A stretch of DNA of 64,000 nucleotides from Hypanus sabinus (taxonomy: Eukaryota). Position numbers and translations under genes: made by a program. The stretch lies in the NCBI RefSeq assembly GCF_030144855.1, contig NC_082706.1:13020001-13084000 (forward strand), written 5' to 3'. The notes beneath the pieces are model-generated. The model made no database searches. It was not told the origin of the DNA and was given only the letters and a program-made list of their open reading frames with translations. This document shows positions 10,409 through 38,437 of the stretch, piece by piece (the stretch's first letter is position 1; the number at the start of each line of letters is the position of its first letter).

Positions 10409-10441
<33 letters not shown>

Positions 10442-12721: not shown

Positions 12722-12834
12722 TTTATTATATTTACCATTAGAAATGTACAGTAAGTAATCTTTCACAGATGTTTGACAAAATGTGCACATTTCAGAAACT
12801 GCACATTGAAGTGCCAAAGGCAATGAATTTTATT
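12722..12834 (-). terminator. Candidate polyadenylation signals of the hnRNP H3-like gene
   Basis: AATAAA on the minus strand at 12834-12829 and 12727-12722, about 1 kb after the stop codon, at the end of a repeat-free AU-rich 3' UTR. Confidence 0.55.
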
Positions 12835-13812: not shown

Positions 13813-13901
13813 TCACATTCTCCATCCAGTCATGTTTGCGTCCACGTTACCCATTCCCATGGTCTGATTGTTGGAATATCCTCCTGCCACAGCACCATAG
13901 C
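13813..13901 (-). CDS. hnRNP H3-like coding exon 11 (last; GYGAVAGGYSNNQTMGMGNVDANMTGWRM*)
   Basis: Acceptor TTACAG, phase 1, TGA at 13815-13813; the GWRM* end resembles the HNRNPH3 GWRGMY* end. Confidence 0.88.
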
Positions 13902-14111
13902 CTGTAATTTAAACAGCAAATCTTGTTTTAAAAGTATCAATTTCTTTGTCCGTAATTGTCATACTTGTTCAGCTTGATTTACACAATGCCCGCAAAAGTA
14001 GAGGGGTTATGAAATGTTCTGAAGTTAATTGTTTCATCCCTATTTAAGGTTTTATTATAACTGGCAGCCAATGACTCCCCAAAGCAGCGTTCAAGTCGGA
14101 ACTTCACTTAC

Positions 14112-14219
14112 CATATCCACGTGCATTTGCAGAATTTCCATAGCCCGCATAATTATTTCCCATGTTGCCATAGCTATTTCCCATACCCTGATCATTATGC
14201 CCATAGCCTCCTTGATTAC
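14112..14219 (-). CDS. hnRNP H3-like coding exon 10 (GNQGGYGHNDQGMGNSYGNMGNNYAGYGNSANARGY)
   Basis: 108 nt, CAG/GTAAGT, phase 1-1, GY-rich; NQGGYG..GMGNNY matches HNRNPH3. Confidence 0.9.
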
Positions 14220-15040
14220 CTGTCAGAAATAACAAGAAAAAATACACCTGATTATCCTCACCCTATCTTCAGTAGAGCAATCACCATTTAGCCGCTGATA
14301 CGCACGCCATTTAAACAGCAATGTCCCTGCATAAAGTTATTCTATTTGTGAGTACAATAAACAAATGCAAAAAATATCAAGTATTAGCTATCTCTACTGA
14401 AGACTTTCAGCATACCATGAAACACAGGAACAGAATTAAGCCATTCAGCCCACCAAGTGTACTCCACCATGACTGACTTATTTTCCCCAGTGTATAGTCT
14501 AACATAGTGGTCACCAACCTTTTTAAGCCCAAGATCCCCTACCTCAGCCTCAGTGAAAGGCAAGATCGACCTACTAAATCATTTAGAGAAAAAACAGCTG
14601 AGACTGTACTTCCAACTTGAGGCCCTTTATTTGGGCTAATTGTATTTTAATTACACAAGATACTTTTGTCAAATTCTCAAATTAATTCAACCAAGAAAAC
14701 ACTAACTAGCCTATCAAACAGGCCATAACGGCATCCAGCTCATCCAATAATGCCTTGCTGAAGTGCTTTTGCTCGAATCAAGTTTATCAGTTTGACCACC
14801 AGTGTCATTACATGAGAAAAGTCCAAGACCTTCCCAGCCAAGGTCTGCTGATGAATCACATGGTGATAATCCAGGAAGTCAGGAAAATCAGGATCATTAT
14901 GGCACAGTGCTATAAAAAACCAACGTGCACACGGCTCATTGCTGGGCATCAGTAGTAATTGCTACCAGTTTATGAATGGGGATGTCATTTTCACAGACTT
15001 TTTTTTTAAACTCATTGCAAATATCCTCACCTCTTGTTCT

Positions 15041-15667
15041 TATTGGAGCATAAAAGTTGCATTGTAACCAAAACTATGTAGTCAGCTTTGTGTTTACTAT
15101 GCATGTATCCAATTTAGTAGGAGAATGAAATCTTAAGAATGTAGAAGATAATGGTGTGTTAATGAGAGGTTAGCTAAGAGATGTAGATTATGTAGTCAGC
15201 TTTGTGTTTGCTATGCATGTATCCAATTTAGTAGAATGAAATCTTAAGAATGTAGTAGACAATGGTGTGTTAATGAGAGGTAGCTAAGAGATGTAGATGA
15301 TAATGGTGTGTAAATGAGGTAGCTAAGAGATGTAGATTATAATGGTGTGTTAATGAGAGGTAGCTAAAAGATGTAGATTATAATGGTGTGTTAATGAGAG
15401 GTAGCTAAGAGATGTAGATTAGAACATGATTAAGTTAGTGGGTAGAAACAATAGTGGCTGATGTACTTGTGATACACAACTGTAGATCGAATGGATATGC
15501 TAATGCAACTAAACCAGGAGATTGCTATAAAAAAATGCTATGTACAAGGTGGGCAATCAGCAACTAGCTCAATGACTGTCTCAGCTTTGATTTGCAAACT
15601 AAAGTTTAACCCTTCTTGAAGAATCTTGTGTCTCCTGGTCGGTTGTGGGGCAGGAGAAACCACGACA
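15041..15667 (+). mobile_element. Solo LTR nested in the hAT transposase
   Basis: 4-bp TSD TTCT (15037-15040 and 15668-15671) splits the LKER/TRGEDI coding sequence; ends in CA; TATAAAA near 15526; tandem repeats upstream of the TATA. Confidence 0.75.
15150..15421 (+). repeat. About 41-bp tandem repeat (about 5 copies) inside the LTR
   Basis: Unit AATGGTGTGTTAATGAGAGGTAGCTAAGAGATGTAGATTAT; the first copies belong to a duplicated unit of about 113 bp. Confidence 0.9.
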
Positions 15668-17513
15668 TTCTCTCTTTTAAGTGCAAAAGAGTGAGCAAGT
15701 CCTCCGCTGTAAAATCCTGGAAAGCCATTCTGACAAATACAATAAGCTGAGCTGTTTGCATTACATCCAGGGATTCATAGAGTGACAAGTCCTTTAACAC
15801 TTGTCGATCCACGTCCTTTGACCAGCATGTTTGATGGGCCTTCAACCCTGATTTCAGCTCCTCAACTTTCCTGGTATTGGTAAACTGTTACTGAGATACT
15901 AGTATAAGTTTCAGAGGTAAGCAAGCTAATGAGTCCACTGTTTTTGTTTCCCATTTCTTTTATATTTGGGGAATGCTGGAATTTAAAGGGGGAGAAGTGT
16001 TGTAATGTGAGCATTATAAAGTTAATACCAATTAGGACTGTGGCAATTTAGCAATACTCCTGCTATGGAAAGCTGTTTGTAAAGAGAAATTGTTTCCAGG
16101 GTTGCGGAGTTTTCCTTACAGGTTTTTCTGCCCGGTGTGCATTAGTGAAAACCTCTATGTGAATATCGTTTTACCGTCCTAGATAGAGTTGCTCCTTTTG
16201 GGCATGAAGTTGTCGAGTGGTCCTTTTCCAAAGTAGAAGTTACTACATATTTGCATCAACAGGTTTATCAGGGTGGGTGGGTGGGTGGGGGTGGGGGTGT
16301 GTCTGTGTCTGTGTGTGTGTTTACGAAGTCTCAAAGATCAACCGGTCGGCAACCACTAGTCTAACATATGCTGTTTCAGACAACACAGGACCCCTCCATC
16401 CTGTCCCTTTGGAAACTAGTCATCGTAGCATTTTTCAAACCTGGTTTAAGTTAAACATGACAAACTAACTTTCTTAAACACCTCTACAACCAAGTAAATC
16501 TTTAAAATGTATTGACAACTCAATAGCCCATTACACATCACCCACTGATTGAAAAAAAATGTTCAAACATGATAAAGGAAACCACCTTTCAAGTTTTCCA
16601 AGTGGCTCAGCACCTGGATCTCATTGTCCCTTTAAACTCATTGGTTTCAGTGTAAATTTACAAACAGCAGTATACAAGAGTACTATCAAAGTTTAGAAAA
16701 TCTACCAACAGAGCACAGCCCTGAGGGTGCTGGATTACTGTACTTTTACTGTCTGTCCTCTTAAAATTGACATCCTCAATTACTGAGACTGGTAATTTTA
16801 CTTCAAAAATTTAATTTTTATTAGAAAGAATTAATTTGAAAACTATGACAGAAATCATTTATGTTAAAAAGGAAGCTTGATGACAATAATACCATTTTAA
16901 TAGTCGACATTTCAGGCTGAGGCCATTCTTCAAGATCTGATGAAAGTTCTTGGCCCGAAATATCATTGTTTCCTCCCTTTTATAGGCACTGCCTGCCTGC
17001 CTGACCTGTTGAGCTTCTCCAGGCAATATGTGTGGATTTCCAGCATCTGCAAAAACTCACGTTTGCACTGCCTGCCTGCCTGACCTGTTGAGCTTCTCCA
17101 GCATTGTGTGTGGATTTCCAGCATCTGCAAAAACTCATGTTTATATTGGCCATGTCAATGAAATATACTTTAGCTATCATTTGTCATCTAAAGATTTAAG
17201 TACATTCGGTTAAAACCAGTAAAATAACTGTCCCATTCAAATTTGTGCCCAATTCTAATGCTTTTCAATTTTTTTTGCGTGTTCCTGTGCTTGAAACCTG
17301 CCAGTTTACTGTCTAGTGAAAAGAACTGACTGCCTCTAAATAATGTTAATAAGCTGACAATCTGAGAAAGTTGGCAGTGATCTCCAGACATCCATTTACA
17401 AATGTGCTAGTTGTCAGGACCACCTATCTAATGGACAGTTATTGAAAACCTTCACGTTTTACCAAATTAAGTTAAATGATGAAGTTAGAAATCAAGTCAA
17501 AACTGATAATCAC

Positions 17514-17621
17514 CTCCATATTGATCCATACCCATATCACCCATTCTATGTGCTCCATAGCCACCAAAGCCACTTCCCATATTGGCAGTGGAGTCGAGGA
17601 AAAGCTCAATATATCGATGCT
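17514..17621 (-). CDS. hnRNP H3-like coding exon 9 (QHRYIELFLDSTANMGSGFGGYGAHRMGDMGMDQYG); donor position ambiguous
   Basis: Acceptor TTTTTTCAG at 17622; end of qRRM3. Three phase-1 donors are possible (exon ends at 17541, 17532 or 17514). Confidence 0.85.
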
Positions 17622-17999
17622 CTGAAAAAAACAATTAATAATGCACAATTTCTCCTTACACAGCAGTTTCAGTATGAACAATGTGGTCAAAATTAATGAG
17701 CACAAATTTGAATATTAACATCTTACAATAGGTATTAGAAAAGTTGCAGTGGACCAAATACACAAAATAGAAACTAAAACTGAATCTACAAGGTACAGAT
17801 TTTACAACCAAAGAACCTAAAATCAGATATGCAGCACTAGTCTAATTTTCATTAATAAACCTTAGATGATAGGTTATATAGATTAAAGGCTGCTGCTCAA
17901 GATAGTATGTCCAAGTTGATGTTGATCACATTTAAGCACAATATACCTTTGATAACGTTTGATCAGATATGCACTTACAGAACTAGACAAATTACTCAC

Positions 18000-18135
18000 G
18001 CATATGTGCTTTGTCTTTAGACATGGCTGCAACAGCATCTTCATGAGTAGCAAACTCAACATCAGCTTCTCCAGTCAGGCGCCCATCTGAGCCATATTCA
18101 AAGTTGATCTTTACAGGAATCAGTGGTGAAAAGAA
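18000..18135 (-). CDS. hnRNP H3-like coding exon 8 ([45 protein letters not shown])
   Basis: 136 nt, TAG/GTGAGT, qRRM3 core. Confidence 0.96.
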
Positions 18136-18192
18136 CTATTGGGAAATAGAAGTGATAATTGTCAACAAGCAATGGTTACTCCCACCCACGAC

Positions 18193-18930
18193 AGAACATA
18201 ATATAAATGGCAAGACTCTTGACGGTGTGGAGGATCTGAGCAATCTTGGGGTCCATGTTGACAGGACACTAAAAACTGCTGCACAGGTTGACAGTGTTGT
18301 TAAGGCGGTGTATGGTGTATTGGCATTCATCAACTGTGGGATTGAGTTCAAGAGCCGTGAGGTAATGTTACAGTACTTTAAGACCTTGGTCAGACCCCAC
18401 TTGGGAGTACTGTGTTCAGTTCTAGTCACCTCACTACAAGCAAGATGTGGATACTATAAAGAGTGCAGAGAAGATTTACAAGGATGTTGCCTGGTTTGGA
18501 GGGCGAACCTTATGAGAATAGTTTGAATGTACTTGGCCGTTTCTTCTTGGAGCAACAAAGGATGAGAATTGACCTGATCAAGGTGCATACGAGGGGCATT
18601 GATAGTGTGGATAGCCAGAATCTTTTTCCCAGGGCTGAAATGGTTAACATGAGGGGGCATAGTTTAAGGTGCTTGGAAACAGGTACCGAGGGGATGTCAA
18701 GGAAAAGTTTTTCACCAAAATAGTGGTGGGTGCGTGGAATGCACTGCCAGCAGCAGTGGTGGAAGTGGATTCAATAGTCTGTTAAGAGCCTCTTAGATAC
18801 GTACATGGAGCTTAGAAAAATAGAGGGCTATGCTCTAGGGAAATTCTAAGTAGTCTCCGGAATAGGTTACATGGTCGGCATAACATTATGGGCCGAAGGG
18901 CCTGCAATGTGCTGTAAATTTCAATGTTCT
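18193..18930 (+). mobile_element. CR1-type LINE 3' fragment, intronic, antisense to the host gene
   Basis: Frames read LGVHVDRTLK, FKTLVRPHL and QRRFTRMLPGLE, followed by the family tail. Confidence 0.9.
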
Positions 18931-18934
18931 AAGT

Positions 18935-19097
18935 CAGTGATCCCCAACCACCGTTCTAAGTTAAAGGAAATCATTCTTACCATCAATGCTCAAGGAACTG
19001 GGGCCATCACCACTCCAAAGCATGTGCTACCGGGCTGCATCATTTCCTCGCGGCCCAGTAGCATATGCTTTGCTGCCCTGGTGGTTGGGGACCACTA
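18935..19097. mobile_element. hAT MITE containing a copy of its own right flank
   Basis: TIRs CAGTGATCCCCAACCAC / GTGGTTGGGGACCACTA; 8-bp TSD TTCTAAGT (18927-18934 and 19098-19105). Confidence 0.8.
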
Positions 19098-19496
19098 TTC
19101 TAAGTTAAAGGAAATCATTCTCATCACCAGTGCTCAAGGAACTGGTGCCAATATAGAGTATAGCCAGTTAACATTCTTAGCCAAGCATAAAACAATACAA
19201 TACTTCAAAACTCAACTTAAGAGCTAACCAATTTACATATCAGTGCTAAATAGAGTCATGTTCTGAGTTGTGGCTGCTTGACATGACAAGAGCTTCCACC
19301 AAAATTCAGCTTGAGTTGTTTCAGATGAAAACTTAGTTTTAGTGCTTCTTTTCTACTTTTTTTTGTTTAAGAAAGTCACAGGTGTATCTATTTGGGAAAT
19401 AAAACACTCAGATAACAAAGGTAATGAGACCCTTCCTGATCATTTCAAATTTAGGTTAAATTTAGTGAGGAATACAATTCTCAAAATTCCACTTAC

Positions 19497-19618
19497 ATCA
19501 GCAACATCACTTTCTGTAGCTCTAAATGGTAATCCTCTCATGTGTACATAATGACCTGCACCATTCTGATAAAGTGGGCTGGCATCTCCTGCTCCACCAT
19601 AACCACGGTTACCCATCC
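19497..19618 (-). CDS. hnRNP H3-like coding exon 7 ([41 protein letters not shown])
   Basis: 122 nt, CAG/GTAAGT; GYGGAGDAS and [10 protein letters not shown] are HNRNPH3-type. Confidence 0.95.
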
Positions 19619-20228
19619 CTGTAAATTTTCAACATTGATAGAAACATGAGGGACTAAACCCAGGATGTAAAGCAAACAAATTTAACATATAATGCAACAA
19701 ATTAAAAGTACAAATCAAATAATCAATTATATCTATGCAGGTCTCCAGAGAGGAGCGTTTCCATCATGCTACAGGGCCGGTACTGTGTTATACTGTTTTA
19801 AATTTCTTTAAGACCCTTAGAGTAATGAACTAATTTATTCTTTGAAAGAACTTTTCATAAAGCCCAAAATTTAAAAAAAACAATGCAAGTTTCACTTTGG
19901 GGTAATCTAGTATGACGCAACTCGTAGAGCTGCTGCCATTGCATCACCCCCAGCTCCAGCAATCCTAACTTCCTTTCTCATTCAATGCTTTGCTTTCACA
20001 ATGCAAAGGCAAGCCAGTTGGTAGGTTCTTTTGGCCAGTTGTAAATTGCCACTCTTATGGAGTAGTTGCAGATGGAGAATAACACAGGATTATAAATAAT
20101 GGCTACTGTGGGCTAAAAGACCAATTCCCATCCCATGGTATATGCTATAACTCCCCGTTCATATAGCTTTATATAACTATATGCTTCAATGTACCTACTA
20201 GGGAAAAAAGCCAAACTGAGTTTCATAC

Positions 20229-20339
20229 CTCTATCCATCATTCCAACTCCTCTCATATTGTGTCCAAATCCATCACGTCCATAACCATAGCCATAAGCAT
20301 AACCATCATTATAACCATAGTCCTCAAAATTGCCATAAC
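20229..20339 (-). CDS. hnRNP H3-like coding exon 6 (GYGNFEDYGYNDGYAYGYGYGRDGFGHNMRGVGMMDR)
   Basis: 111 nt, TAG/GTATGA, phase 1-1, GYR domain. Confidence 0.92.
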
Positions 20340-20592
20340 CTAGAATAAAAGGAACATTTTACAATATGACCTAAAAATAAGTTGTGGAACTAAAAGTCCT
20401 TTAAGATATTACTGAAAACCTGTGAGTGGTGAAGACCCAATTAGAGAGCATCTTGTTTGCCTAGACACAAACAGCACATGAATTCTAGAGGCACAAGCTA
20501 ACAGGAGTAAATTCACACAAAATGAAACTCATGCCGATTGATAATTAACACAGCATTAATTTGTAACATACCGAATAAAAAAAATCACTTAC

Positions 20593-20780
20593 CACCACCA
20601 TATACAGAGCCCCGCCGTGTACGGTCATACATGTCTCCTCTCATCGGACCTGGACCACCATAGCCACTTCTTCCACCCATTGGTCGGTCATAGGGCCCTG
20701 GACGTTGTCCCATAAACCTTCTTGGAGGATCCTGATAAGTTCGAATCTCCCCTCTACTGCTTCTGAAGATTTCAATATAC
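20593..20780 (-). CDS. hnRNP H3-like coding exon 5 (RYIEIFRSS ... QRPGPYDRP ..., PY-NLS)
   Basis: 188 nt, CAG/GTAAGT; end of qRRM2 and the RPGPY nuclear localisation motif. Confidence 0.96.
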
Positions 20781-21603
20781 CTGAACAGCCACAATTAATA
20801 TTATTAGCTTGGGATTATGACATCTTAAAAACTGAGTTACAATGTTAATGGCACAACTGTGGATTTCTCTGGTGAAAAGAATCACAAAACTCCCATTGTT
20901 CATTTTTGGCTACATTGCCCTAACCCACTTTTAAACTGACAATAAATCACAACTACAAAATATTCTCAATGTGCACACTTAACATTAGAAAAAAAAATCT
21001 TGTCCCCAATTCAAGTGGATAGTCCTTGTCATTCTTCATTACAGAAACCATCTAGAACGTCGTACCAACATGGTTCAAGATAAAGTATACTTGACTCCCA
21101 GTTTGTGGCATTACTATACTTTCAGATTGTGCGTGATAAACTAATGGCACTTAGCATTAGTTAACAGAAGTTATGAAATTTTTAAAAAGGTGCTCATCAT
21201 TTACAACATTCAAGTGGAAATAAGAGATCTTGGAACATTCAAGATCAGTAACAGACTTGTTAATTAGAAGGAAAGTGAAAACATGGTTAACTTTTCACCA
21301 GAGCAATCAATCTACTTTGTCTTAGCATGGTTAATATTTATATTGAATAAATACAATAGCCATAAAAATAGCTGATTTCCTTTAACAATAAATCTATTAG
21401 ATTAAATGTCTGACTTGTTACAACACATTGGAACCAAGGGAGTGAATAGCTAAATTGAAAATTAGAGGTGGATTTAAGAGGCATGTGTGCTCTTAAAGAC
21501 AGAAGAAGAAATCCACTCAAGGTTAATGAAAGTCACACAAGTGAAGGCCATTAAGCACTCTTCACCACTTAATATGATTATGGCTGCTCTGATGATTGTC
21601 CAC

Positions 21604-22012
21604 TAGTGGTCGCCAACCCGTCGATCACGATTAACTAGTCCATCTTTGAGACTTTCCCAGTAGATCCCGAAAAAAAGAAAATACACTGAGAGCCGTGAAA
21701 ACTAAATTGCAGAATAGACTGGACATGAGGAATCTGCTTCGAGTATCGCTGTATTCCCATCTTGTTTAACACCCCACCCCCCCGTCAGCCGGTCAGCAAG
21801 AATATTGTCAATATTAAACCAGTCTGCAGTGCAAAAAAAGGGTAGGCACCCCTGGTGTTTATACATTATTTCTACTTCTGGATTGCAGGGTTTTACTTAT
21901 GGTCTTTTCTGCCGCGGTGCGCATGTGTGTAACTAATTGATCTGGGGTCGATCTTGCCTTTTATTAAGGCCAAGGTAGGGGATCTTGGGCTTAAAAAGGT
22001 TGGTGACCACTA
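21604..22012 (+). mobile_element. hAT MITE, same family as 14505-16358, opposite orientation
   Basis: TIRs TAGTGGTCGCCAACC / GGTTGGTGACCACTA; TSD TTGTCCAC / CTGTCCAC; shares terminal sequence with the longer copy. Confidence 0.88.
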
Positions 22013-23586
22013 CTGTCCACTTTACTAACCAACTCCAACAATCTTTAGTTCTGTGGTTCAACAAACTCTTGTTTTTGAATGTCTGTCTATAAACTGTTGG
22101 AAAGCATTCCCAAAGAATTTGTCAGTTTAGTGGTCCTTCCACCCCACCCCAAGACCATTCCAGCAAACCCTACATTGCCTCGTTGAGGTATTATCTTTAC
22201 ACCTATTGTGCTAAGGCATCCAGAAATAACAAGATCACCTTGCATTCATCTAAATGTGAGTGTACAGGCCAAGTTTACAGTTTTCCTCCTAAGACAACAC
22301 CCTTTGTCTTGTGAATCAACCGAAATGAACCATCTTTTCCACCATCTTCAAGGTAACTGCATCTGCAAGGACATAAAAGCTCACTGGCAACGCTTCCCTA
22401 CTTTTGTTCTATATGGCTGTTGTGATAGACATTTCATGAATAAACAAGATGCACTTAAAACCAAAGAGAGCAAGTATATTCTCCAATGGTATTGTAGCCA
22501 ATTTCAAATTGCAAGTTAGAAATCTGGGAGCAATTCATCAGCTGGACATTCAGAAAAATCTTAAGTCAATTAATCTTAAGTTAAAAGGTCAGCATAACAT
22601 CATGGGCTGAAGGGGCTGTACTGTGCTGAAATGCTCCATGTCCTAACACTACTCTCCATAGATGCATTGCAAGATCAGCTACACTCAAACTGACGGCTGC
22701 AGATAAGGCTGTTGTGTTGTTTCTAATAAGCCTCAACTGTTCAGAGTTCTACTCAAATTTTAAAAATCATTATGAAAATTTCACGTCCCTCTCTAAAAAT
22801 ATGAATGTTAATGTTGTGACCAATTTAGTTTGGCCACAAACAAAACAGGCCTAGCAACACTAATGTGATGAGACTCCCAAGTTGTGTTAAGCACCAAGTC
22901 AGACATTTTGCTTCAAACAAAGCTTAGTGCAAGGTTGCGAAGTACACATAAGGAAATGTGACGAATTTCATCAATTGGGCATTAGCACCGACGCTTAAGT
23001 ACAAATTCAAAAACTGATTTCAATCCAATGAAACATTGCATTCTCCAGTTGAATTGAATGCAAATCAGCAAGCTGTCTAGTCATCACCTTCCCATAGGTT
23101 AAATGATGACTGAAGCCTGCAGTGCTGTGCGTTTCATGCACTAAAATGAGAAAACAGAAGTTTTGCAATGTCATAATGGTTTGTAAATGTTACAAAAAAT
23201 GTAATTTTATATAATTTAGTTAATCCAAATGTAACAAAATTATTTAAAAATCAAATCAAATTTAAACAATTGAAATTTTAGTGTTCATATCTATGATAAT
23301 CCTAAACTGTAGAGCCCTCTGGATTTCTGAAATTATACAAGTTTAATATTGAAAATTAAAAATACACAAGTATAAATTCTGGCAGATTACATTTACCATT
23401 AACTTTCAACTCTGAGGGACCTACAGTTTAGGACATCTTTACACAATTCAGAAAAATCAGTTGAGTCCCACTGTTTTCCAAAGGCATGTGGGTGGTTTCA
23501 CTATTTTCTCTTCAAGAATGAATGAATTCTGTAACCTGAACAAGTGGGCTTAAAGACATATCAGCCACCCTTCCGTCCATCCCCAC

Positions 23587-23725
23587 CTGTGCCCTATTCT
23601 TTCCTTGTGTTTCCCCAGTGCTTTTTCAGCTATCTCCTTTGATGCAAACTGCACGAAGGCTTCCCCCGTGCTTCTCCCCTGGTAGTCCACCGGCAATGTT
23701 ATCCCATTTGGCACGATTTCCAACC
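23587..23725 (-). CDS. hnRNP H3-like coding exon 4, the 139-nt autoregulated exon ([47 protein letters not shown])
   Basis: Atypical acceptor CCTTGGGTTGAAG and donor AG|GTGGGG; 139 nt, so skipping shifts the frame; qRRM2 core. Confidence 0.97.
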
Positions 23726-26569
23726 CTTCAACCCAAGGACAAATACCCCACAAGGGGAACAATATTAAAAATTGAAACATTCCTACTCTTATACACATAC
23801 TACAGCATATCAAATGGCGAGTACGGATATCAGAATTGACTAAAGAGGCAAGAGGCAGTATAATGCTGTTTAAATAAAGCAAAGATAAATACAGGATTTC
23901 AATTAAAAACAGGCATGCACAGAATGTGGATGTTTAATCTTACCCCAATAGAACATGGGACATGGTTTAATTTATATGCCTGCAAAGACACCGTCCTTGC
24001 AATACTCCAGCTGACTTTTAACATTACATTAACAAATGTTTGAGTAACCTAAACACAGATAAAAGTTCATAAGAGGTGATTAATGTGTATTAAAAAAATA
24101 GGAAGGAGGAATACATCAAGTCCAGTATTTGTGTCACACTGCTACCAAGGCAATGGCATTCAGCTTGTACTGCAGCAGACTACTCTGCTGCTGGATGAAG
24201 TTCAAGGATTTCAATACGATGAACGAATAGTAAATCAGGGTCGCATGAGACGGAGTGAAACCTAAGTGGAGTTTCTGTACTCCTGCTCATAGTTGATCTT
24301 GGATTAAACAAAATCATTAACTAGACAATTTTATCTGGTTGTGAGCAATCAAATTCCAGTATTAGAGATTTGAAACTAGCTCACAATGACACCAATAGGT
24401 CAATGATACTCAACTGGAATGGACCACAGAAATTAAACCATCACACATTAATTCCATACCGAGTGACTGAATTTTTTAATCATTTCAAAATTAAAGGCAT
24501 CAAGGTTTGCTTCTTAGGGTTGTACAATAAACCCAATCCAGATCCATTTGCTTTACATAATCAGCATCATACAGATAGTGAATGCATTTACCAAGCAAAC
24601 TGTGTCAAGATAAATTTAGCATGGTCTTTAAATACAAGTGTTCATTTATACTGTCAGCTGCAAGTTACTGAATGTGAAGAAACAGCAAGGATTAGACCAG
24701 CTACCAGCTCAATAATCATGTGACTTGACTACTGCCCCAACCATATTTACTTGCTCATCTAGCTGATTTGCCTAGCATTTATTTAGGATTAAAATAATTT
24801 CAGTAAAATGTTTAACTGAACTAAACCACCCAATATCTTAAAATAACTGCATGGTAGCTTGTAGAAGCAATCAATTGCCTGCCGAGTCACCGAACCCCAA
24901 AAAGCCGATTTGTTATTACCAGTCTCCGTTAAATCACCACTTCTATGCCACAATTCCTACTCTTACCACCCAGTTATCCCTATGGTACTGCAAGTAGCGC
25001 TTTGCTATATCACATTGGTTGAAAATATTTACTGATTGTTTTGCACCTGAAATGTAACCACATGAGTAAAGAACCACCGACATGAAACTTAACTCAAAAT
25101 GGTTGGCACTTTCAGGGGGGGGGGGGGGGGAAAGTAAACAACAAAAGCTTTGCAACACTCCTGGAAGAACTTAGATAGTCCACCAGTTGTTGAAAATGTC
25201 TGAATAATACTACTTTTTGTTATTACCTCAGTCTGTTCATCCTGTAAAAATTCTTCACAGACAGTAACTGAGACATCAGCAGCAAAGTAAAATGTTACAT
25301 TCTTTTCGAAAGGATAAGTTGTAAACCAAGAATCTAAGCTAAGGGAGAACCACTGTATAATCATCCCTTTTGAGCTTCCCCACTTTGGCACAAGCTTGAA
25401 GGGTTGAGGGAACATTCAATGCATCTCTGTAGCAGACAGCTATAAGTGCATTATCCCAGTTTACATTTCCTCTGTTCAGAGTAAGTGCCCAACATTTGGT
25501 AGACACTTGCCCTACACTGGCAAAGCTGGGTTTGTAAATGCTCAGGACTGCAGACACACAACTGCATCTACTATCCTTCAGCGCAACTCTTTAGATTTCA
25601 AATTTTAGCACTACTGTACTGCCTGTACCAAGTGACCCAAACCTTAACTGGACTAACACTTGAGAAGGAATAGTTTAGAATAACAGCACCATGTTCAAAT
25701 TATGGCTTGCATTGTAGTATGAATTCTAAACTACCAATGCTTATCGATAAATAAAGTGGTACAAGCCTGAATTTGTTGGATGTAGTTGGTAAAGTGAAGT
25801 ATAGAATTCTGCCCTGCAAAATACATTTAGGCAATACTGTTGAAAAATTAACATAATGGGAATAGTTTTCTAAAGTATTCCTTCAATTAATATTAAGACA
25901 CTATTGGTTCACAATACTGGACTCAAGGATTGATATTTCAGAAATCAGAACATCTTTAAATGGAAGCATGGAAAAGCAATGTTACAATTTTGTGATATTG
26001 GCCCCAGTTACGTCAAAGAAACTAAGTTACTATTTAGGCAACGAATCTAACCTATACTTCCAAAAATAACTTAACACTCCACTGTAAAATACAAATGTGC
26101 CTTAGAAACATGGTCCAATACTTCTTGCTGGAACTAAGCTAACTTGTGGGCTTTGTTCTACTATACATCCCAAATCTTCTTGTTCTTTAGCACATACATT
26201 TATGCCAATTGCATAAAACGTTGCCAAGACAACAAAAAGTGTCTTCTTTGTAAATCACTGCAATAAATTGTGAATTTTAGGAATCCTATTCAAATAAAAA
26301 CCCTTGTGCCCAATATTATGTGCCACACTATGGAGTAAAGATTATAATGCTTCACTATCCCATCCCACCCCCCCCCCCAACTGATACAACACTGAATAAG
26401 CCTTGTACATCTATACCAAACATTGATCATTATTGCACAGCTTATGAATAGTCATTTATGAATATTCCCAATCCTTTCCCATTAAAAAATCTGCTTTAAC
26501 ATTATGACATTTAAACCCCATGTTCAAACATACGGCAGTCCAATACTGGAGGAAATAAACAATAAGTAC

Positions 26570-26713
26570 CCGTAAAAAACTGTAAAATTTCCTCTTTGCT
26601 GCATCCAAATGGTAAGCCTCTAAGGCGTACAGTTCCATCACTTGTTGATTCTGTCTGACTTGGGTTAACGTGCTTTAGCACCCAGTCCATTTCGGTGGCT
26701 TTAGTCTCAAAGA
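26570..26713 (-). CDS. hnRNP H3-like coding exon 3 ([48 protein letters not shown])
   Basis: 144 nt, CAG/GTACTT, phase 1-1; qRRM1-qRRM2 linker. Confidence 0.96.
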
Positions 26714-28120
26714 CTGCAAATACAAATTGAAATACTGAAATCTAAACAAATTATTCTTTGCAATGACAAGAACTATACCTGAATCAACAATCCAAGCATT
26801 CCCATTTTAGTGTACATTACATTTGTCTAACAGACAGCAAATACATTTAGCATAGAAAATAAATCCTTACAAATTTAAAATTTATCAAAAATTTATGCAT
26901 GATTTATAATGCTAAGATTCATCTGACAATGTTCAAACATTGATTTTTATCTATATTGAACAGCTCAAGCCTAAAATCTATACTTGGAATTTTCCATTTC
27001 ACCAACAATCCCTTCCTGCACCTGTGCCAAACAAATTCAATGGGATCAATATCACACTCCACCTACAGACAACTTTTATTACTCATCCCACCACCAGTGC
27101 AAAAGCTAATTCTATTGACATGTACACCCAAACTTGAATTGAACCTTACTTAATTTATGATTTCAATACCAGCTGCTTAAATGATCAAAACATTATATTT
27201 TATTACAGAGGTAAGCAAGGGGCTAGCTAAAATCTAGGTTCTCTGAAGGTTAAATACAGATTGTATAATCATTCATAAGCCCTCCTCCCCACTAGACTCT
27301 GCAATAGGCATTTCAATTCTTTTGCAATGTACTGCAAATTAACTAATTATTCAATAAGCATTCAGGACTTATGCCAAATCCTGAGGTACTCATAGGCCAC
27401 AGTTGCAGTTGTTTTAACAGAAACATCTCAGGTTTCCAGCTGGATCACTAATGTATGCAAGTACATGTATCATTTTCCTTTGTAATTAAATTCCATTACA
27501 TGTTCCCCATATTTCAACAGCAGATAAATAGTACCATGCCTTTTTATAAACAGCCAGCACCTCATCCACAATCACAAGGCACCAGTTACACAAACATGCG
27601 GAAAACAGAACATTAGATTAAAACAACGGGGTTTAAGCAACATAGAAGAAAGCCTGTCATCTAAATTAATCTTGATATCTATGAACAATCATTCCACTGC
27701 GCCCCCCCCCCCCCACCACACGCAAAAAAAAATTCTCCCAGCAGAATGAAAGGCATTGAGGCTAGAAATGGAGACATTATTCATCTGGCAGCATCTTGGG
27801 CTGGAAAAGGTAAAGAAAGGAGGGGCAAGAGCTTTATTAAAAGTTTTGGATTCAAACTAAATATGCAGAAACCACTGTAAGTCAAAGAGTATAGAAGGAT
27901 GAACTGGATCTAGTGAAAGTTAGGAAAAAGTCATGGAATTTAGAAAATGGGAGGACAGTCAGATCATTGAAATAAACAATAGTCCCACAGCACTCAAGTA
28001 TTTACTGATGTGTCAAACAGAAATATTGTTTCACTCATTACTTCATTAAGCACAAGGAATTCAGTAAATGAAACACTTGAGCTTGGGCTTTGGCAAGCCT
28101 ACAACTTAAGATAAGCTTAC

Positions 28121-28276
28121 CTTCAATGTATCTATGCCCCATGCTTTCTCGATCTTTTGCAAGGGCACATTTTATATCATCCTTAGATTCTAGCTGAATG
28201 TAAGCTTCTCCACTTGGACGGCCTTCTCTCAAATAAGTGAAATGAATCCCAGCAGTTCCATTTAATATTTTGCAAT
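28121..28276 (-). CDS. hnRNP H3-like coding exon 2 ([52 protein letters not shown])
   Basis: 156 nt, CAG/GTAAGC; qRRM1 core. Confidence 0.96.
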
Positions 28277-28499
28277 CTGTAAACAATGAATTACAGGCTT
28301 GTGATTTTAGGAAAAGGCAACATGGAAACAAGATAAAACATCAAATAGCATTTGGAGTAAAAAAAATCAAAAGCAAAGGCCATTATGGAAACTCTGAATC
28401 TACACAAATACTGGTTATTAACCAGCCTGCTGGCCTCTAATATTGAATATAGTCATAATATACAACCAAAGGTTGCAGGTAGTTGTAAAACGGAGAAAA

Positions 28500-30188
28500 A
28501 TAAGACCACAAAACATAGGAGCAGAATTAGGCCATTCAGCCCAATTCTGTTCTGGCATCCCATAATGGCTGACTTATTACTCCCTTCAACCCCATTCTCC
28601 TGCCTTCTCTCCAGAACCCTTGATGCCCTTGCTAATCAAGAACCTATTAACATCCTCCTTAAATATACCCAATGACTTGGCATCCACAGTTGTCTGTGGC
28701 AATGAATTGCACAGATTCATTAACCTCTAGCTAAAGAAATTCCTCATCACCACTATTCTAGGATATGTATTTCTATTCAGAGGCTATGCCTTTATGTCCT
28801 AGACTCCTCCACTACAGGAAACATCCTCTCTATGTCCACTCGATCCAGGCTTTTCAACATCCAACAGGTTTCAATGAGGAACCCCCCCCCCCCCCCCCAC
28901 AATTCTCATAGGCTCAGAGCCATCAAATGCTCCTCATCCCCAGGTTCATTTCATGAACCACCTCTGGATGGCAGCATACCCTTTCTTAGATATGGGACCA
29001 GAACTGCTCACAATACTCCAAGTACACGCTGACCAATGCCTTATGAAGCCCCAGTTTTACATCCTTGCTTTTATATTCTACTTTTCCCAAAATGAATGCT
29101 AACATTGCATTTGCTTTCCTTACTATCGACTCAACCTGCAAGTTTATCTTCAGGGAATCCTGCATAAGAACTCCCAAGTCCTTTTGCACCTTTGACTTCC
29201 TCTGTTTAGAAAATTGTCTACACCTTTGTTCGTTCTACCAAAGTGCACAACCATATACTTCCCTATGCTATATTCCATATGCCACTTCTTTGCCCATTCT
29301 CCTAATCTGTCCAAACTTCTGCAGACTCCCAACTTCCTCAACACTATTTGCCCCTCCACCTTTGTATCCTGCACAAACCTGACCACAAAGCCATCAATTC
29401 AATCTCTCATCATTGAGATGTGAAAAGAAGCAGCCCCAACAACTATCCCTGCAGAACTACACTAGTCACTCACAGTCAACCAAAAAAAGGCCCCCTTTAT
29501 TCCCACCCTTTCCCTCCTGCCAGTCAACCAATCTTCTATTCACCTCTTTCCTACAATACAATGGGCTCTGATCTTCTAAGGCAGTCTCATGTGCAGCATC
29601 TTGTCAAAGGCCTTCTGAAGATCTAAGAAATCAACATCCACTGACTCTCTCCTTCGTCTATCCTGCCAGTTATTTCCTCAAAGAATTCCAACAGATTTGT
29701 CAGGCAAGGTCTAAAAACGATGCTGACTTTCTGTCTCTAAGTAACCTCACTGTGTGCATACATCTACTGCTACTTCTGGACACATCATCAGTGATGTTCC
29801 TGGAATCATCGGGTGTTTCGGGTCTTTCAGCATCATACACCCTTCTCCAGGTGACCCAGCTGGGGCTGATCAGACCCCAGCTTGTGTCCAGATGGCTAGC
29901 TATACATGACTCCATGGCTCCCCCCTCTTGAGCTACAGCCACCTTGAGGCCCTCCCTGCCGCATCGGTGGTACCGCAGATGGCTCTCCTCTTCCTCTCTC
30001 CCTCGATGCCCATATTGCTGTAGGCTCTGGCTAAGGAAGAGCCAAAACTTTATCCTTAATATTGGACTCCAACATCTTCCCAACCACTGAAATCAAACTA
30101 ACTGACCTAAAATTTCCTTTCTTCTACCTCCCTCCCTTTTTAAAGAGTGGAGTGACATTTGTAATTTTCCAGTCCACCAGAACCATTT
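28500..30188 (-). mobile_element. CR1-type LINE remnant with deletions and a nested insertion
   Basis: Frames read QKDLGVLMQDSLK, KANAMLAFI and LDRLGEWAKKWHMEY on the minus strand; family tail near 28500. Confidence 0.88.
29749..30043 (-). mobile_element. HERO-like (REL-endonuclease clade) non-LTR retrotransposon 3' end nested in the CR1
   Basis: The minus strand translates to SLARAYSNMGIEGERKRRAICGTTDAAGRASRWL*LKRGEPWSHV*, resembling HERO C-termini from memory; GC-richer block that interrupts CR1 sequence. Confidence 0.65.
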
Positions 30189-30475
30189 CAATTATAATTA
30201 CTGGCAAGTATGATTGGAAAAAAAGTAGATGTAAAAAAAAATCAGCTTATAAGATAGGAGAAAATGGTTGGGCTACATAGAAATAAAGAGGGAGAATGAC
30301 TTGTTGAGAATGCAGAGCATCAGGTGTTTGACAGGCCATAAGGCCTCATCCAGTATTGGTCCAAAATCTCAGTATTACTGTCCAAATATATATTAAACAT
30401 CCAATTAAAATTTTTGAGCAAACTTCAGATTCCAAAATTTCAATTGCTGAACTGTTAAGAATAAATTCACAAAAC

Positions 30476-30554
30476 CTGAAAAGAATCGCAACACTTCATC
30501 TGCAGTGCAGGACCATGGAAGCCCACGAATTCTGACAATGTAATCTTCTTCCAT
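30476..30554 (-). CDS. hnRNP H3-like coding exon 1 ([26 protein letters not shown]); the exon begins at 30587
   Basis: Acceptor TTTTTTCTCCAG at 30588, CAAATGG start, donor CAG|GTTTT, RGLPWSC motif of qRRM1. Confidence 0.94.
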
Positions 30555-32107
30555 TTGAATGCACGACTCTGATCAATTAAGAAACGTCTGGAGAAAAAAG
30601 TTTTCGTTATCAGCTGCACAATGTTTCTAAAAATCAAGATATTAAAAGCACTTTTTAAAAATGGCTTTAAAAATAGCCCTTTTCCAAAACAAAGTGTTCA
30701 AAGTTGAAAGTAAATTTTATTGCAACACACACAAAGCACTGGAGGAACTCAGGTCAGACAGCATTAGACCAAAAGCATTCTTCAGGACTAAGAAAGGAGG
30801 AAGATGTCAGAATAAAAAGCTGGTGGGGAAGGGGAAGAGGCTAGCTGGAAGATGATAGGTGATGGCAGGTGAGCGTGGAAGGTCAAGGACTGAAGAATTT
30901 TATTATCAAAGTACCTAGGTTAGAACTCTGTGATTCATTTCCTGTTGGGTATACTTTTAAAAAATCTATAGGAACAATTGAAATGCAAATAAAAACTCTG
31001 GAGAACCAAGGCATTATAACTGTCAAACTGAACAAGAAGATAACAACTTAATAGAATTTAAAAGAATCCATAAACACCTCGTGGCCTGACAAATAACACA
31101 AAATTTTAAGATGGTAAATGTTTACCAAGGTAAAAAGTTTGGGCCAAGATTAAACTGCTTTACTTCAGTTCCAGATTGTGCTGCAGAAACACAATTTTAA
31201 TGCGCACAGCCAGTGTCTTAATATTTTTGATTTTAAAAAGGACTTCCATGCATGAGGAAGAATTTTTAATGTAAAGAAAATTCTAATTTAAAATTCTAAG
31301 TCCTAATGCGATCGCTCAGATCTGCACATACAGAGCAACCAAATTCCTGGAACGAGAAAGGAAAGATCGCCCAAAAGAGTTAGTTCCTATATTCATTCAC
31401 AAGAACTAGGGTCGAATTAACTAACTTAGTCTAGAATCGCTAGACAGTTCCAAAGAACAACAAACGTGGGGGAAAAAAATCGTCATCAGGTATGATCCCC
31501 AAAATCCGAGTCTCGGGTTTTAAATACATTCAAAAGTGGATTTGTAGATATTCCAGAGGAAAAGAGATTTAGAGCTAGCCAAATCGAGTTAAATATAATG
31601 GGGGGCCCAAACTACAGATTACTTGCAGGGCTAACACTGAAATCAATCCTGAACACAGAACACGAACCAACCTGAATCTGTCCAATTGACTACGGACGAT
31701 GACAGGCAGCGAAATAGTGGGGGCTTTTAACGTGAGTGGTGGTGCCACCCAGAACTAAAGATCGGATAGTTGTGATTGAACAGTAAGCGTTGCGGGGAAA
31801 CGCAAAAGCCTCAAGAAGAGGGAAGGCAGCCAAGTACTTATGTGTCATCATATGGAACCCTGAGATTCATTTATCTGTGGGAATATTCAGCAGATCTATA
31901 GAATAGCAATTATAACAGGATCAATGCGAGATCAGAGAGCACAAGACAACACAGTCCAAAAGCAAACTTCAAATAAATAACATTAAATTACTGCTGCAGG
32001 TAACCAAACCGAGCCGCTTTTCTGGCTGGCGCCCTGGGGAAAAGACTGGACGCGGGAGGGGAAAACTCGTCGAGGGCGCAAACCGTCCATTACACGGTGG
32101 CGCTCCG

Positions 32108-32119
32108 CAAAATGGCGGC
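32108..32119 (+). promoter_or_regulatory. YY1 consensus site in intron 1 of the hnRNP gene
   Basis: CAAAATGGCGGC within the CpG island. Confidence 0.7.
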
Positions 32120-32210
32120 CGCGCCTCACAACACAGCGTCCTGGTGTCCGGGCCCTCGCCACATCCACGCCCCCCACCCCCACCCCCCAGCCAGCCGGCC
32201 ACCCACTCAC

Positions 32211-32400
32211 CACCCTTCGCTCAGCCCGACCGTAACTTCAGCTGCTTTCTCTCCCTCTCCTCAGAATAAAAAACATGCTCGCTCCACCGCCTCGCGTCAG
32301 ACGGCCGGCCTGAAGCGGACAATTGAGAGAAAAGCTGAAAACAACACCCTACCTTTAGCGCGCAGCTCAACGTTTGCCCCACGCGCACAGCGTACTTGCG
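32211..32400 (-). other. Probable non-coding first exon(s) of the hnRNP H3-like gene
   Basis: CpG island; donors GTG|GTGAGT (exon end 32211) and AAG|GTAGGG (exon end 32353); TSS approximate. Confidence 0.55.
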
Positions 32401-33105: not shown

Positions 33106-33119
33106 ATGAGCTTCCTTTT
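33106..33119 (+). CDS. MOB1A: MOB1A coding exon 1 (MSFL-F)
   Basis: ATGAGCTTCCTTTT|GTAAGT, 14 nt, phase 2; the canonical MOB1 start. Confidence 0.93.
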
Positions 33120-38191: not shown

Positions 38192-38437
38192 TAGGGTTTC
38201 CAACCTGGGATCCGTGGGTCCCTCGGTTAATGTAGGGGTCCATGGCGTTTTTAAAAGTTGGAAACCCCCTGCTGTAGATCTATCCTCACATTCCTTGCCT
38301 CAGTACTATCCAGTTCCACATTGAACATTGTACCTCTTGTTGTTGATTTATTTAGAGCAGGGTTCCCAACATATTTTATGCCATGGACCAATACCATTAA
38401 TCGAGGGGGTCCTTGGATCACAGGTTGAGAACCCCTG
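38192..38437. mobile_element. Two 80-bp hAT MITEs in inverted orientation (38192-38271 and 38358-38437)
   Basis: TIR consensus CAGGGGTTCCCAAC; 8-bp TSDs TTGTAGAT/CTGTAGAT and ATTTAGAG/ATTTGGAG; further copies near 36759-36841, 41402-41480, 47922-47996 (TSD CTCTAGAA) and 56697-56776. Confidence 0.85.

What the first reader, a model, noticed from the sequence alone, without database searches (positions are those of the whole stretch)
13813..32400. HNRNPH3-type gene between MTHFD2 and MOB1A: candidate whole-genome-duplication paralogue lost in mammals
Seen: an intact, intron-containing hnRNP H gene with H3-type residues ([42 protein letters not shown]), head-to-head with MOB1A and next to a probable MTHFD2. 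Known: human HNRNPH3 lies by RUFY2 (chr10), HNRNPH1 by RUFY1 (chr5), and GRSF1 is head-to-head with MOB1B (chr4). MOB1A and MTHFD2 are direct neighbours on 2p13 with no hnRNP gene between them. The 2p/8p and chr10 segments are sister paralogons (as for FGFR1/FGFR2). Inference: this gene is the fourth-paralogon copy, sister to HNRNPH3, kept in chondrichthyans; it would be an unnamed splicing regulator.
Basis: partly seen in the sequence, partly recalled or inferred. Interest (0 to 1): 0.85.

Follow-up and report, generated by a model that had tools for sequence, protein, structure and literature searches.

The report
Shark-and-ray-only fourth hnRNP H gene
Between MOB1A and MTHFD2 this stingray carries an intact, strongly conserved extra copy of the hnRNP H family of splicing regulators; it is found in all cartilaginous fishes sampled, has no counterpart among bony vertebrates, and is most likely a leftover of the early vertebrate genome duplications.

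Summary
On the minus strand at 13813-30554 lies an 11-coding-exon gene with GT-AG introns throughout. It encodes a 459-aa protein with three qRRMs, identical to RefSeq "HNRNPH3-like" of Hypanus sabinus. Its start codon lies 2.55 kb from that of MOB1A, head to head. Exon 1 of MTHFD2 lies 10.7 kb downstream.

The same genome also holds a true HNRNPH3 and an HNRNPH1-type gene, each tail to tail with a RUN+FYVE (RUFY) gene. Callorhinchus HNRNPH3 sits beside a PBLD-type gene, as in human.

The window's gene ("H3L") forms a clade of cartilaginous fishes only (support 100/100), under purifying selection (dN/dS 0.08-0.12). The order MOB1-H3L-MTHFD2 is kept in chimaera and shark. Descent from the cartilaginous-fish HNRNPH3 is rejected (p-AU 0.0085). 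The only H-type gene my searches returned from lamprey also faces a MOB1 gene, and zebrafish has rufy3-grsf1-mob1ba, so the MOB1-linked position is ancestral.

H3L, H3 and H1 form an unresolved trichotomy, and the "H3-type residues" are ancestral states.

The gene is already annotated but has no name of its own, and I found no paper on its origin. It is a new member of a known family, of moderate interest.

The parts
13813..30554 (-). Coding span of the hnRNP H3-like (H3L) gene: 11 coding exons, 459 aa. Exons: 30554-30476, 28276-28121, 26713-26570, 23725-23587, 20780-20593, 20339-20229, 19618-19497, 18135-18000, 17621-17514, 14219-14112, 13901-13813.
   Evidence: Joined exons give one open frame with canonical splice sites. 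The product is identical to P0231 / XP_059820697.1. The same 11-exon layout is found in Leucoraja, Stegostoma and Callorhinchus orthologues, and in Callorhinchus H3 and lamprey H.
28121..30554 (-). Exons 1-2, encoding qRRM1 (motifs RGLPW, GRPSGEA, HRYIEVF)
   Evidence: PDB matches to hnRNP H qRRM1-2 (6DHS, residues 5-188, 325 bits) and to hnRNP F qRRM1; one of three RRM_1 stretches.
20593..26713 (-). Exons 3-5, encoding qRRM2 (RGLPF, GRSTGEA, HRYIEIF) and the RPGPYDRP stretch (residues 199-206) of the Gly/Tyr/Arg-rich linker
   Evidence: PDB matches to hnRNP H/H2/F qRRM2; chain 8SGH_B of HNRNPH2 aligns to residues 99-215. That RPGPY is a nuclear import signal is from prior knowledge, not tested here.
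17514..19618 (-). Exons 7-9, encoding GYGGAGDAS and qRRM3 ([23 protein letters not shown])
   Evidence: PDB matches to hnRNP F and H' qRRM3 (2HGN, 1WEZ, about 138 bits) against 107 bits for GRSF1 (4QU7).
13813..14219 (-). Exons 10-11, encoding the Gly/Tyr/Asn-rich tail that ends GWRM, then the stop codon
   Evidence: The lamprey protein ends similarly (…GNWNM).
23411..23886 (-). The 139-nt exon 4 (23725-23587) with highly conserved intron flanks; probably a regulated cassette whose skipping shifts the frame (inference)
   Evidence: 87.5% identity over 481 nt to Callorhinchus, higher than any coding-exon match to Callorhinchus (72-87%). 83% over 1162 nt to Leucoraja and 75% over 1062 nt to Stegostoma. 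The exon is 139 nt in H3L, in Callorhinchus H3 and in lamprey H.
12548..13812 (-). Probable 3' UTR with conserved blocks
   Evidence: blastn: 13915-12548 aligns to Leucoraja, 12970-12708 to Stegostoma and 12812-12703 to Callorhinchus. The polyadenylation site was not mapped.
30555..33105 (.). Divergent intergenic/promoter region between the H3L and MOB1A start codons (2.55 kb), GC-rich around 31.9-32.4 kb, with a 26-nt block (32107-32132) identical in Leucoraja
   Evidence: The distance between the two CDS starts is 2.6-5.2 kb in Hemitrygon, Stegostoma, Callorhinchus and Leucoraja. Transcription starts were not mapped.
33106..61759 (+). MOB1A, coding exons 1-5 (33106-33119, 48345-48511, 50551-50644, 58644-58777, 61596-61759); the last exon is beyond the window
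   Evidence: Splice-consistent join gives 191 aa. PDB scores favour MOB1A over MOB1B in both exons tested. A Mob1_phocein gene of 216 aa is head to head with H3L in four other cartilaginous fishes.
3009..3091 (-). Probable exon 1 of MTHFD2 (presequence-like peptide, GT donor); the rest of the gene lies beyond the left edge
   Evidence: The pattern M…H[LT]SA.R occurs once in the window, at the place and on the strand where Callorhinchus and Stegostoma have exon 1 of their THF_DHG_CYH gene. MTHFD2 rather than MTHFD2L by PDB scores of the Callorhinchus exons.

Best explanation
The gene is a functional fourth member of the vertebrate hnRNP H / GRSF1 family, here called H3L. It arose before cartilaginous and bony fishes split, most likely in the two early vertebrate genome duplications. 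It still sits at the family's ancestral place, head to head with a MOB1 gene, on the paralogon that carries MOB1A and MTHFD2. Cartilaginous fishes kept all four copies: H1 beside a RUFY gene, H3 beside PBLD and a RUFY gene, GRSF1, and H3L beside MOB1A. Bony vertebrates lost H3L, which left MOB1A and MTHFD2 as direct neighbours. By inference from its sequence, the protein works like hnRNP H/F. It would be a nuclear RNA-binding protein whose three qRRMs grip runs of G in pre-mRNA and so steer alternative splicing and polyadenylation. Its own level is probably controlled through the conserved 139-nt exon 4. Which of the other copies is its closest sister is not settled.
For: Shown:
- Intact 11-exon gene identical to a RefSeq model.
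- Three RRM stretches, with strongest PDB matches to hnRNP H/F qRRM1-3. The loop motifs RGLP[WF], G-x-x-[ST]-GEA and HRYIE-x-F are each present three times, and RPGPYDRP is present (sequence).
- dN/dS is 0.08-0.12 between ray, skate, shark and chimaera. The exon layout is identical, and also shared with Callorhinchus H3 and lamprey H, so the gene is not a retrocopy.
- It forms a separate clade (100/100) made only of cartilaginous fishes, both among 202 family proteins and in the careful trees. In the search with a ray orthologue, the nine H3L clusters score 755-1055 bits and everything else scores 604 or less.
- The same genome has H3 and H1-type genes, each next to a RUN+FYVE gene. Callorhinchus H3 is next to a PhzF/PBLD-type gene.
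- A clade of H3L plus cartilaginous-fish H3 is rejected (delta lnL 34.8, p-AU 0.0085).
- The order MOB1<-->H3L->MTHFD2 is conserved in chimaera and shark, and MOB1<-->H3L in skate and stingrays.
- The one H-type gene my search returned from lamprey is head to head with MOB1.

From papers:
- Zebrafish gene order is rufy3(+), grsf1(-), mob1ba(+) (PMC9210284).
- A pig 100-kb interval holds only SLC4A5, MTHFD2 and MOB1A (PMC11812088).
- GRSF1 exists separately in Callorhinchus, elasmobranchs and cyclostomes (PMC6028389).

Inferred: origin by whole-genome duplication, loss in bony vertebrates, nuclear G-tract binding, and autoregulation through exon 4.
Against: - The order of branching among H3L, H3 and H1 is unresolved (75/33 for H1+H3; the alternatives have p-AU 0.19 and 0.107).
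- No GRSF1 sequence could be put in the tree, because none could be fetched with these tools.
- The only outgroups are two long cyclostome branches.
- Chromosome-scale synteny was not examined. Only the immediate neighbours were seen, because flanks are capped at 10 kb.
- MOB1A versus MOB1B rests on differences of 2.5-4 bits in two exons.
- MTHFD2 in this window is one short exon.
- Absence from bony vertebrates rests on annotated proteins and on lists cut at 120 hits. Unannotated relics or a very diverged orthologue would be missed.
- There is no expression or RNA-binding data.
Confidence: 0.72

Rival explanations
1. An ancient duplicate, but not from whole-genome duplication. A single-gene or segmental copy was made in the gnathostome or vertebrate stem, and its place beside MOB1A is either the original site or came from a segmental copy that included MOB1.
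For: The tree gives only an old, unresolved split. Chromosome-scale synteny was not examined. MOB1, MTHFD2 and the H gene could have been copied together in a segment.
Against: The neighbours MOB1A/MOB1B and MTHFD2/MTHFD2L are themselves two-copy paralogue pairs on the same two paralogons. The H-MOB1 head-to-head pair is seen in lamprey and in zebrafish grsf1-mob1ba. A family of exactly four in cartilaginous fishes fits two rounds of duplication.
Confidence: 0.14
2. A duplication within cartilaginous fishes of HNRNPH3 (or H1) that was inserted beside MOB1A and then diverged quickly.
For: The clade holds only cartilaginous fishes. It shares several residues with H3. Its stem branch is fairly long (0.22-0.25).
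Against: A clade of H3L plus cartilaginous-fish H3 is rejected (p-AU 0.0085). Elasmobranch H3 groups with bony-vertebrate H3 (97/90; Callorhinchus H3 falls outside that clade in the tree). The shared residues are ancestral. A position facing MOB1 is also the lamprey and GRSF1 arrangement. A clade with cartilaginous-fish H1 alone was not tested.
Confidence: 0.06
3. It is the little-changed cartilaginous-fish orthologue of GRSF1, since both lie head to head with a MOB1 gene.
For: Same local arrangement as grsf1-mob1ba. H3L falls outside H1+H3 in the best tree.
Against: GRSF1 is reported as a separate gene in Callorhinchus and elasmobranchs (PMC6028389). The neighbours here are MOB1A-type and MTHFD2-type, not MOB1B/MTHFD2L-type. 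The protein starts directly at qRRM1, with no room for a mitochondrial presequence. H3L is no closer to human GRSF1 domains than H1 or H3 are (107/94 bits against 113/97 and 109/98).
Confidence: 0.04
4. It is simply HNRNPH3 moved to a new place.
Against: A separate H3 next to a RUN+FYVE gene exists in the same genome, and next to a PBLD-type gene in Callorhinchus. Identity to that H3 is only 65%. The clades are distinct.
Confidence: 0.01

Closest known systems
HNRNPH3 (hnRNP 2H9)
   Same: Same family and the same 11-coding-exon layout (exons of 156, 144, 139 and 136 nt shared with Callorhinchus H3). Shares [18 protein letters not shown] and a Gly/Tyr tail. Neither meets the RNPHF zinc-finger model that H1 weakly matches. 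About 65% identity to the H3 of the same species.
   Different: Different locus: H3 lies by PBLD and a RUFY gene, H3L by MOB1A and MTHFD2. Separate clade. The shared residues are ancestral, not shared derived states. From prior knowledge, the mammalian H3 protein lacks qRRM1; H3L, like non-mammalian H3, has all three.
HNRNPH1 / H2 / F
   Same: Three qRRMs with the same G-tract-binding loop motifs, the RPGPY stretch and Gly/Tyr-rich regions. They give the best PDB matches (6DHS, 325 bits). The 139-nt exon 4 is also present in lamprey H and Callorhinchus H3.
   Different: About 60% identity. H1 has derived residues where H3L keeps the cyclostome state. H1 lies tail to tail with a RUFY gene. That H2 and F are later single-coding-exon copies is from prior knowledge.
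GRSF1
   Same: Family member that also lies head to head with a MOB1 gene (zebrafish rufy3-grsf1-mob1ba). It may be the paralogon partner of H3L.
   Different: GRSF1 is mitochondrial and much diverged (PMC6028389). H3L has no N-terminal extension and scores far higher to H/F domains than to GRSF1 domains.
Lamprey / hagfish hnRNP H-like gene (the only cluster per group returned by the search)
   Same: Head to head with MOB1. Same exon layout. Similar C-terminal end. Its best non-self hits are H3L proteins (561 and 541 bits).
   Different: About 57-62% identity. The scores to H3L, H3 and H1 overlap (480-561 bits), so one-to-one orthology is not shown.

Membership tests
hnRNP H/F (qRRM) protein family | Three quasi-RRM domains | tested here: met
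   RRM_1 with 3 stretches, 91.6 bits. PDB matches to hnRNP H/F qRRM1, 2 and 3.
hnRNP H/F (qRRM) protein family | Conserved qRRM loop motifs used for G-tract recognition (RGLP[WFY]; R/G-x-x-[ST]-GEA; HRY[IV]E-x-F) | tested here: met
   Each motif is present in all three domains of the 459-aa product. Their role in G-tract binding is from published hnRNP F-RNA structures (2KFY, 2KG0, 2KG1 are among the hits). Binding itself was not tested.
hnRNP H/F (qRRM) protein family | Gly/Tyr/Arg-rich linker with the RPGPY import motif, and a Gly/Tyr-rich tail | tested here: met
   RPGPYDRP at residues 199-206. HNRNPH2 chain 8SGH_B aligns to residues 99-215. GY-rich stretches at 207-290 and 375-459. Nuclear import was not tested.
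hnRNP H/F (qRRM) protein family | Intron-containing gene with the family's exon layout (not a retrocopy) | tested here: met
   11 coding exons. Exons of 156, 139 and 136 nt are shared with lamprey H and Callorhinchus H3.
HNRNPH3 orthologue group | Conserved neighbours PBLD (head to head) and RUFY2 (tail to tail) | tested here: not met
   The neighbours here are MOB1A and MTHFD2. The PBLD- or RUFY-linked gene is a different one.
HNRNPH3 orthologue group | Falls inside the clade of gnathostome H3 proteins | tested here: not met
   The H3 clade (97/90-92) excludes H3L. A clade of H3L plus cartilaginous-fish H3 is rejected, p-AU 0.0085.
GRSF1 orthologue group | N-terminal mitochondrial presequence and GRSF1-type qRRMs | tested here: not met
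   The protein starts [14 protein letters not shown], directly at qRRM1. GRSF1 domains score 94-107 bits against 136-325 for H/F.
GRSF1 orthologue group | Neighbours MOB1B and RUFY3 | tested here: inconclusive
   A MOB1 gene is adjacent, but it scores as MOB1A. No RUFY gene is seen; MTHFD2 follows instead. The GRSF1 locus of cartilaginous fishes could not be fetched.
2R ohnologue set (H1 / H3 / GRSF1 / H3L) | Duplication older than the split between cartilaginous and bony fishes | tested here: met
   H3 and H1 clades each contain cartilaginous and bony fishes and exclude H3L. AU test.
2R ohnologue set (H1 / H3 / GRSF1 / H3L) | Each copy lies on a different paralogon, with paralogous neighbours | tested here: met
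   Local level only. RUN+FYVE genes lie beside H1 and H3. MOB1A and MTHFD2 lie beside H3L. mob1ba and rufy3 lie beside grsf1 in zebrafish.
2R ohnologue set (H1 / H3 / GRSF1 / H3L) | Chromosome-scale synteny assigns the four regions to one ancestral linkage group | not testable with these tools
   Flanks are capped at 10 kb, and there is no whole-genome access to cartilaginous-fish assemblies.

The most novel reading that the evidence does not exclude
H3L is the least-changed descendant of the original vertebrate hnRNP H gene, still at its original MOB1-linked site, and is the second-round twin of GRSF1 rather than of H3. MOB1, MTHFD2 and (from prior knowledge) SLC4A4/5 and DCK/DGUOK each survive only on the H3L and GRSF1 paralogons, and the best tree pairs H1 with H3. 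Cartilaginous fishes would then preserve the nuclear form from which the mitochondrial G-quadruplex factor GRSF1 was derived.
Probability: 0.25. Interest if true: 0.55.

Novelty: new member of a known kind. Interest (0 to 1): 0.42.

Why it matters
It gives the hnRNP H / GRSF1 family a complete set of four copies in one vertebrate lineage. It also adds a well-documented case to the list of ancient duplicates kept by cartilaginous fishes and lost by all bony vertebrates. The family's history can now be tested directly: which copies are sisters, when GRSF1 moved to mitochondria, and when mammalian H3 lost qRRM1. Sharks and rays would carry one more G-tract splicing regulator than the species in which this family has been studied. 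The strongly conserved intron flanks of exon 4 suggest that an autoregulatory splicing switch predates the duplications. The gene is already in RefSeq under a borrowed name, and the protein is predicted to work like its relatives, so the gain is evolutionary rather than mechanistic.

Tried and rejected
1. Aligning the 11 exon translations to a full-length relative, to build a spliced query. MAFFT stacked the three qRRMs on one another, so the alignment was discarded.
2. The one representative search, run with exon 5 alone, returned mostly fragments. It served only as an entry point (P0001).
3. Exact look-ups of P0165, P0149 and P0211 found no gene on record. Other isoforms or members of the same clusters worked.
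4. GRSF1 of cartilaginous fishes could not be retrieved. No reference sequence was available and hit lists are cut at 120. As a result GRSF1 is missing from the trees and its locus was not inspected. I relied on PMC6028389 for its presence.
5. Motif scans of 1-13800 for later MTHFD2 exons found none. Only exon 1 is in the window.
6. blastn of the window's left end against Leucoraja hit only repeats.
7. Comparing H3L, H3, H1 and lamprey H with human GRSF1 domains in the PDB showed no special affinity.
8. The atlas search added nothing.
9. Literature searches for an hnRNP H3 paralogue in sharks or other cartilaginous fishes found no relevant paper.
10. The scan's own notes held nothing on RUFY, GRSF1, MOB1 or MTHFD2 in this genome.


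Full report
**What is there**

The window has no N and a GC content of 0.36-0.48. Eleven minus-strand open blocks between 13.8 and 30.6 kb carry hnRNP H-type peptides. They join through canonical AG/GT sites, with consistent phases, into a 1380-nt CDS of 459 aa. The product equals P0231 = XP_059820697.1, [quoted passage not shown], residue for residue. The window is therefore Atlantic stingray DNA, and my model reproduces RefSeq's.

**The protein**

- Pfam finds three RRM stretches.
- Against solved structures, the best matches are human hnRNP H qRRM1-2 (6DHS, 325 bits), H2 and H qRRM2, and hnRNP F/H' qRRM1, 2 and 3. These hits include the entries of the hnRNP F-RNA complexes. GRSF1 domains score only 94-107 bits.
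- The three loop motifs of qRRMs are present in each domain: RGLP[WF], G-x-x-[ST]-GEA and HRYIE-x-F.
- The linker holds RPGPYDRP, and both Gly/Tyr-rich regions are there.
- The protein begins directly at qRRM1, so there is no mitochondrial presequence.
- My reading is that it is a nuclear G-tract-binding regulator of splicing and polyadenylation, like hnRNP H/F. This is inferred from sequence; nothing here tests binding or location.

**Neighbours**

- *MOB1A.* Its start codon is at 33106 on the plus strand, 2.55 kb from the H3L start codon. Exons 2-5 follow up to 61759, and the last exon is outside the window. Two exons score slightly higher to MOB1A than to MOB1B (105 v 102.5 bits; 109 v 105 bits).
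- *MTHFD2.* On the left, the window holds only one short exon on the minus strand (3091-3009). It encodes a presequence-like peptide that ends …RLHTSAPR before a GT donor.
- *Why this exon is MTHFD2.* In Callorhinchus (L002) and Stegostoma (L003), the gene following H3L on the same strand carries THF_DHG_CYH domains. Its first exon ends …HLHLSAHR in Callorhinchus and …QLHLSALR in Stegostoma. The pattern occurs once in the window, at the matching place. Callorhinchus exons 2 and 4 score 89.2 and 93 bits to human MTHFD2, against 79.5 and 76.7 bits to MTHFD2L.
- "Probable MTHFD2" is therefore right, though the window itself shows only exon 1.

**Is it just HNRNPH3?**

No.

- A search with a sturgeon H3 and then with a ray orthologue showed two H3-like groups in cartilaginous fishes.
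- The window's protein is 78-99% identical to "H3-like/H-like" proteins of rays, skates, sharks and chimaera, but only about 65% identical to their "H3". Cluster members show the gene in more than 20 species.
- In Hypanus itself, H3 (P0108) lies on another chromosome, tail to tail with a RUN+FYVE gene. The H1-type gene (P0168) lies on a third chromosome, tail to tail with another RUN+FYVE gene.
- Callorhinchus H3 (P0266) is head to head with a PhzF-domain gene, which is what PBLD is. This matches the human PBLD-HNRNPH3-RUFY2 arrangement (the human order is from prior knowledge).

**Age and origin**

- A 51-protein maximum-likelihood tree gives an H3L clade (100/99), an H3 clade in which elasmobranch and bony-vertebrate H3 group together (97/90), and an H1 clade (100/100).
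- In a 202-protein tree, the H3L clade holds only cartilaginous fishes.
- Forcing H3L together with cartilaginous-fish H3 costs 34.8 log-likelihood units (p-AU 0.0085). This rules out a recent duplication of H3.
- MOB1<-->H3L->MTHFD2 is conserved in chimaera and shark, and MOB1<-->H3L in skate and stingrays.
- The search seeded with the lamprey protein returned one lamprey and one hagfish cluster, and that lamprey gene is also head to head with a MOB1 gene.
- Zebrafish has rufy3(+), grsf1(-), mob1ba(+) in a row (PMC9210284).
- In pig, SLC4A5, MTHFD2 and MOB1A are the only genes listed for a 100-kb interval (PMC11812088).
- GRSF1 is reported as a separate gene in Callorhinchus, elasmobranchs and cyclostomes (PMC6028389).
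- The simplest account is an ancestral RUFY-H-MOB1 arrangement quadrupled by the two vertebrate genome duplications. All four H-type copies were kept in cartilaginous fishes, and the MOB1A-linked copy was lost in bony vertebrates.
- Whole-genome duplication as the mechanism is inferred from local paralogous neighbours only. Chromosome-scale synteny could not be examined.

**What is not supported**

"Sister to HNRNPH3" is not shown.

- With lamprey plus hagfish as outgroup, the best tree joins H1+H3 weakly (75/33; with lamprey alone 93/90). Neither H3L+H3 (p-AU 0.19) nor H3L+H1 (p-AU 0.107) is rejected.
- I counted sites where the clade consensus is clear and both cyclostomes agree. At five sites H3 = H3L = cyclostome and H1 is derived. 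No site is a shared derived state of H3+H3L.
- Callorhinchus H3 is H3 by synteny but falls at the base of H1 in the trees. This also shows how short the deep branches are.

**Function is maintained**

- Pairwise dN/dS between Hypanus, Leucoraja, Stegostoma and Callorhinchus is 0.08-0.12, with dS 0.42-0.97.
- Exon number and phases are conserved. Exons of 79, 156, 144, 139 and 136 nt are identical in size. Sizes 156, 139 and 136 are shared with Callorhinchus H3 and lamprey H.
- The 139-nt exon 4 and its intron flanks are more conserved between stingray and chimaera than any coding-exon match to Callorhinchus (87.5% over 481 nt, against 72-87%). Skipping exon 4 would shift the frame. I read this as an old splicing switch that controls the gene's own output, but that is inference.

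**Novelty and verdict**

- The gene is annotated automatically in many species. The one paper I found that took in all Callorhinchus qRRM proteins (PMC6028389) does not single it out.
- My text searches found no paper that treats it as a fourth ohnologue.
- It is a new, unnamed member of a well-known family with a predicted family-typical function, and another case of an ancient duplicate kept by cartilaginous fishes and lost in bony vertebrates.
The sister-group claim is open, and interest is moderate.

Noticed in passing
window 22832-23940 (minus strand), around exon 4 (23725-23587): The intron sequence flanking the 139-nt exon 4 is highly conserved: 87.5% over 481 nt to Callorhinchus, 83% over 1162 nt to Leucoraja, 75% over 1062 nt to Stegostoma. 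That exceeds the coding exons. The block shared with skate and shark extends over the 23079-23160 stretch that another note calls a candidate poison exon; the chimaera match stops at 23411.
   Followed up: partly
L004 (Petromyzon marinus CM110123.1) 1-19836: The lamprey hnRNP H-like gene, the only one my search returned, lies head to head with a 216-aa MOB1 gene (7.8 kb between the CDS starts). It has the same 11-coding-exon layout (156, 139 and 136-nt exons) as H3L and H3.
   Followed up: partly
L005 (Callorhinchus milii MU249838.1); proteins P0111 / P0266: Callorhinchus HNRNPH3 is H3 by synteny (next to a PhzF/PBLD-type gene) and by the GYGGAGDAS motif, yet both careful trees place it as sister to the whole H1 clade (98/97), not with elasmobranch H3. 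Either it evolves very slowly, or its N-terminal half has been homogenised with H1.
   Followed up: partly
window 12703-12970: A conserved block about 1 kb beyond the stop codon is shared with Stegostoma (78%) and Callorhinchus (78%). It is probably a 3' UTR regulatory element of H3L.
   Followed up: no
window 32107-32132: A 26-nt stretch in the divergent H3L/MOB1A intergenic region is 100% identical in Leucoraja. It may be a shared promoter or 5' UTR element.
   Followed up: no
window 172-544 (-), 1565-2020 (-), 9127-10140 (+), 18104-18723 (+), 49517-49971 (+): Open frames that look, by eye, like reverse-transcriptase and Tc1/mariner-type transposase fragments are scattered through the intergenic DNA and the introns of both H3L and MOB1A. 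One repeat family at the left end has several copies in the Leucoraja locus.
   Followed up: no
protein P0001 (Acipenser sinensis, 'UNVERIFIED_CONTAM'): This sturgeon H3 model contains a tandem repeat of the segment YIEIFKSS…RPGPYDRP…. It looks like an assembly or annotation artefact, so I left it out of the trees.
   Followed up: no
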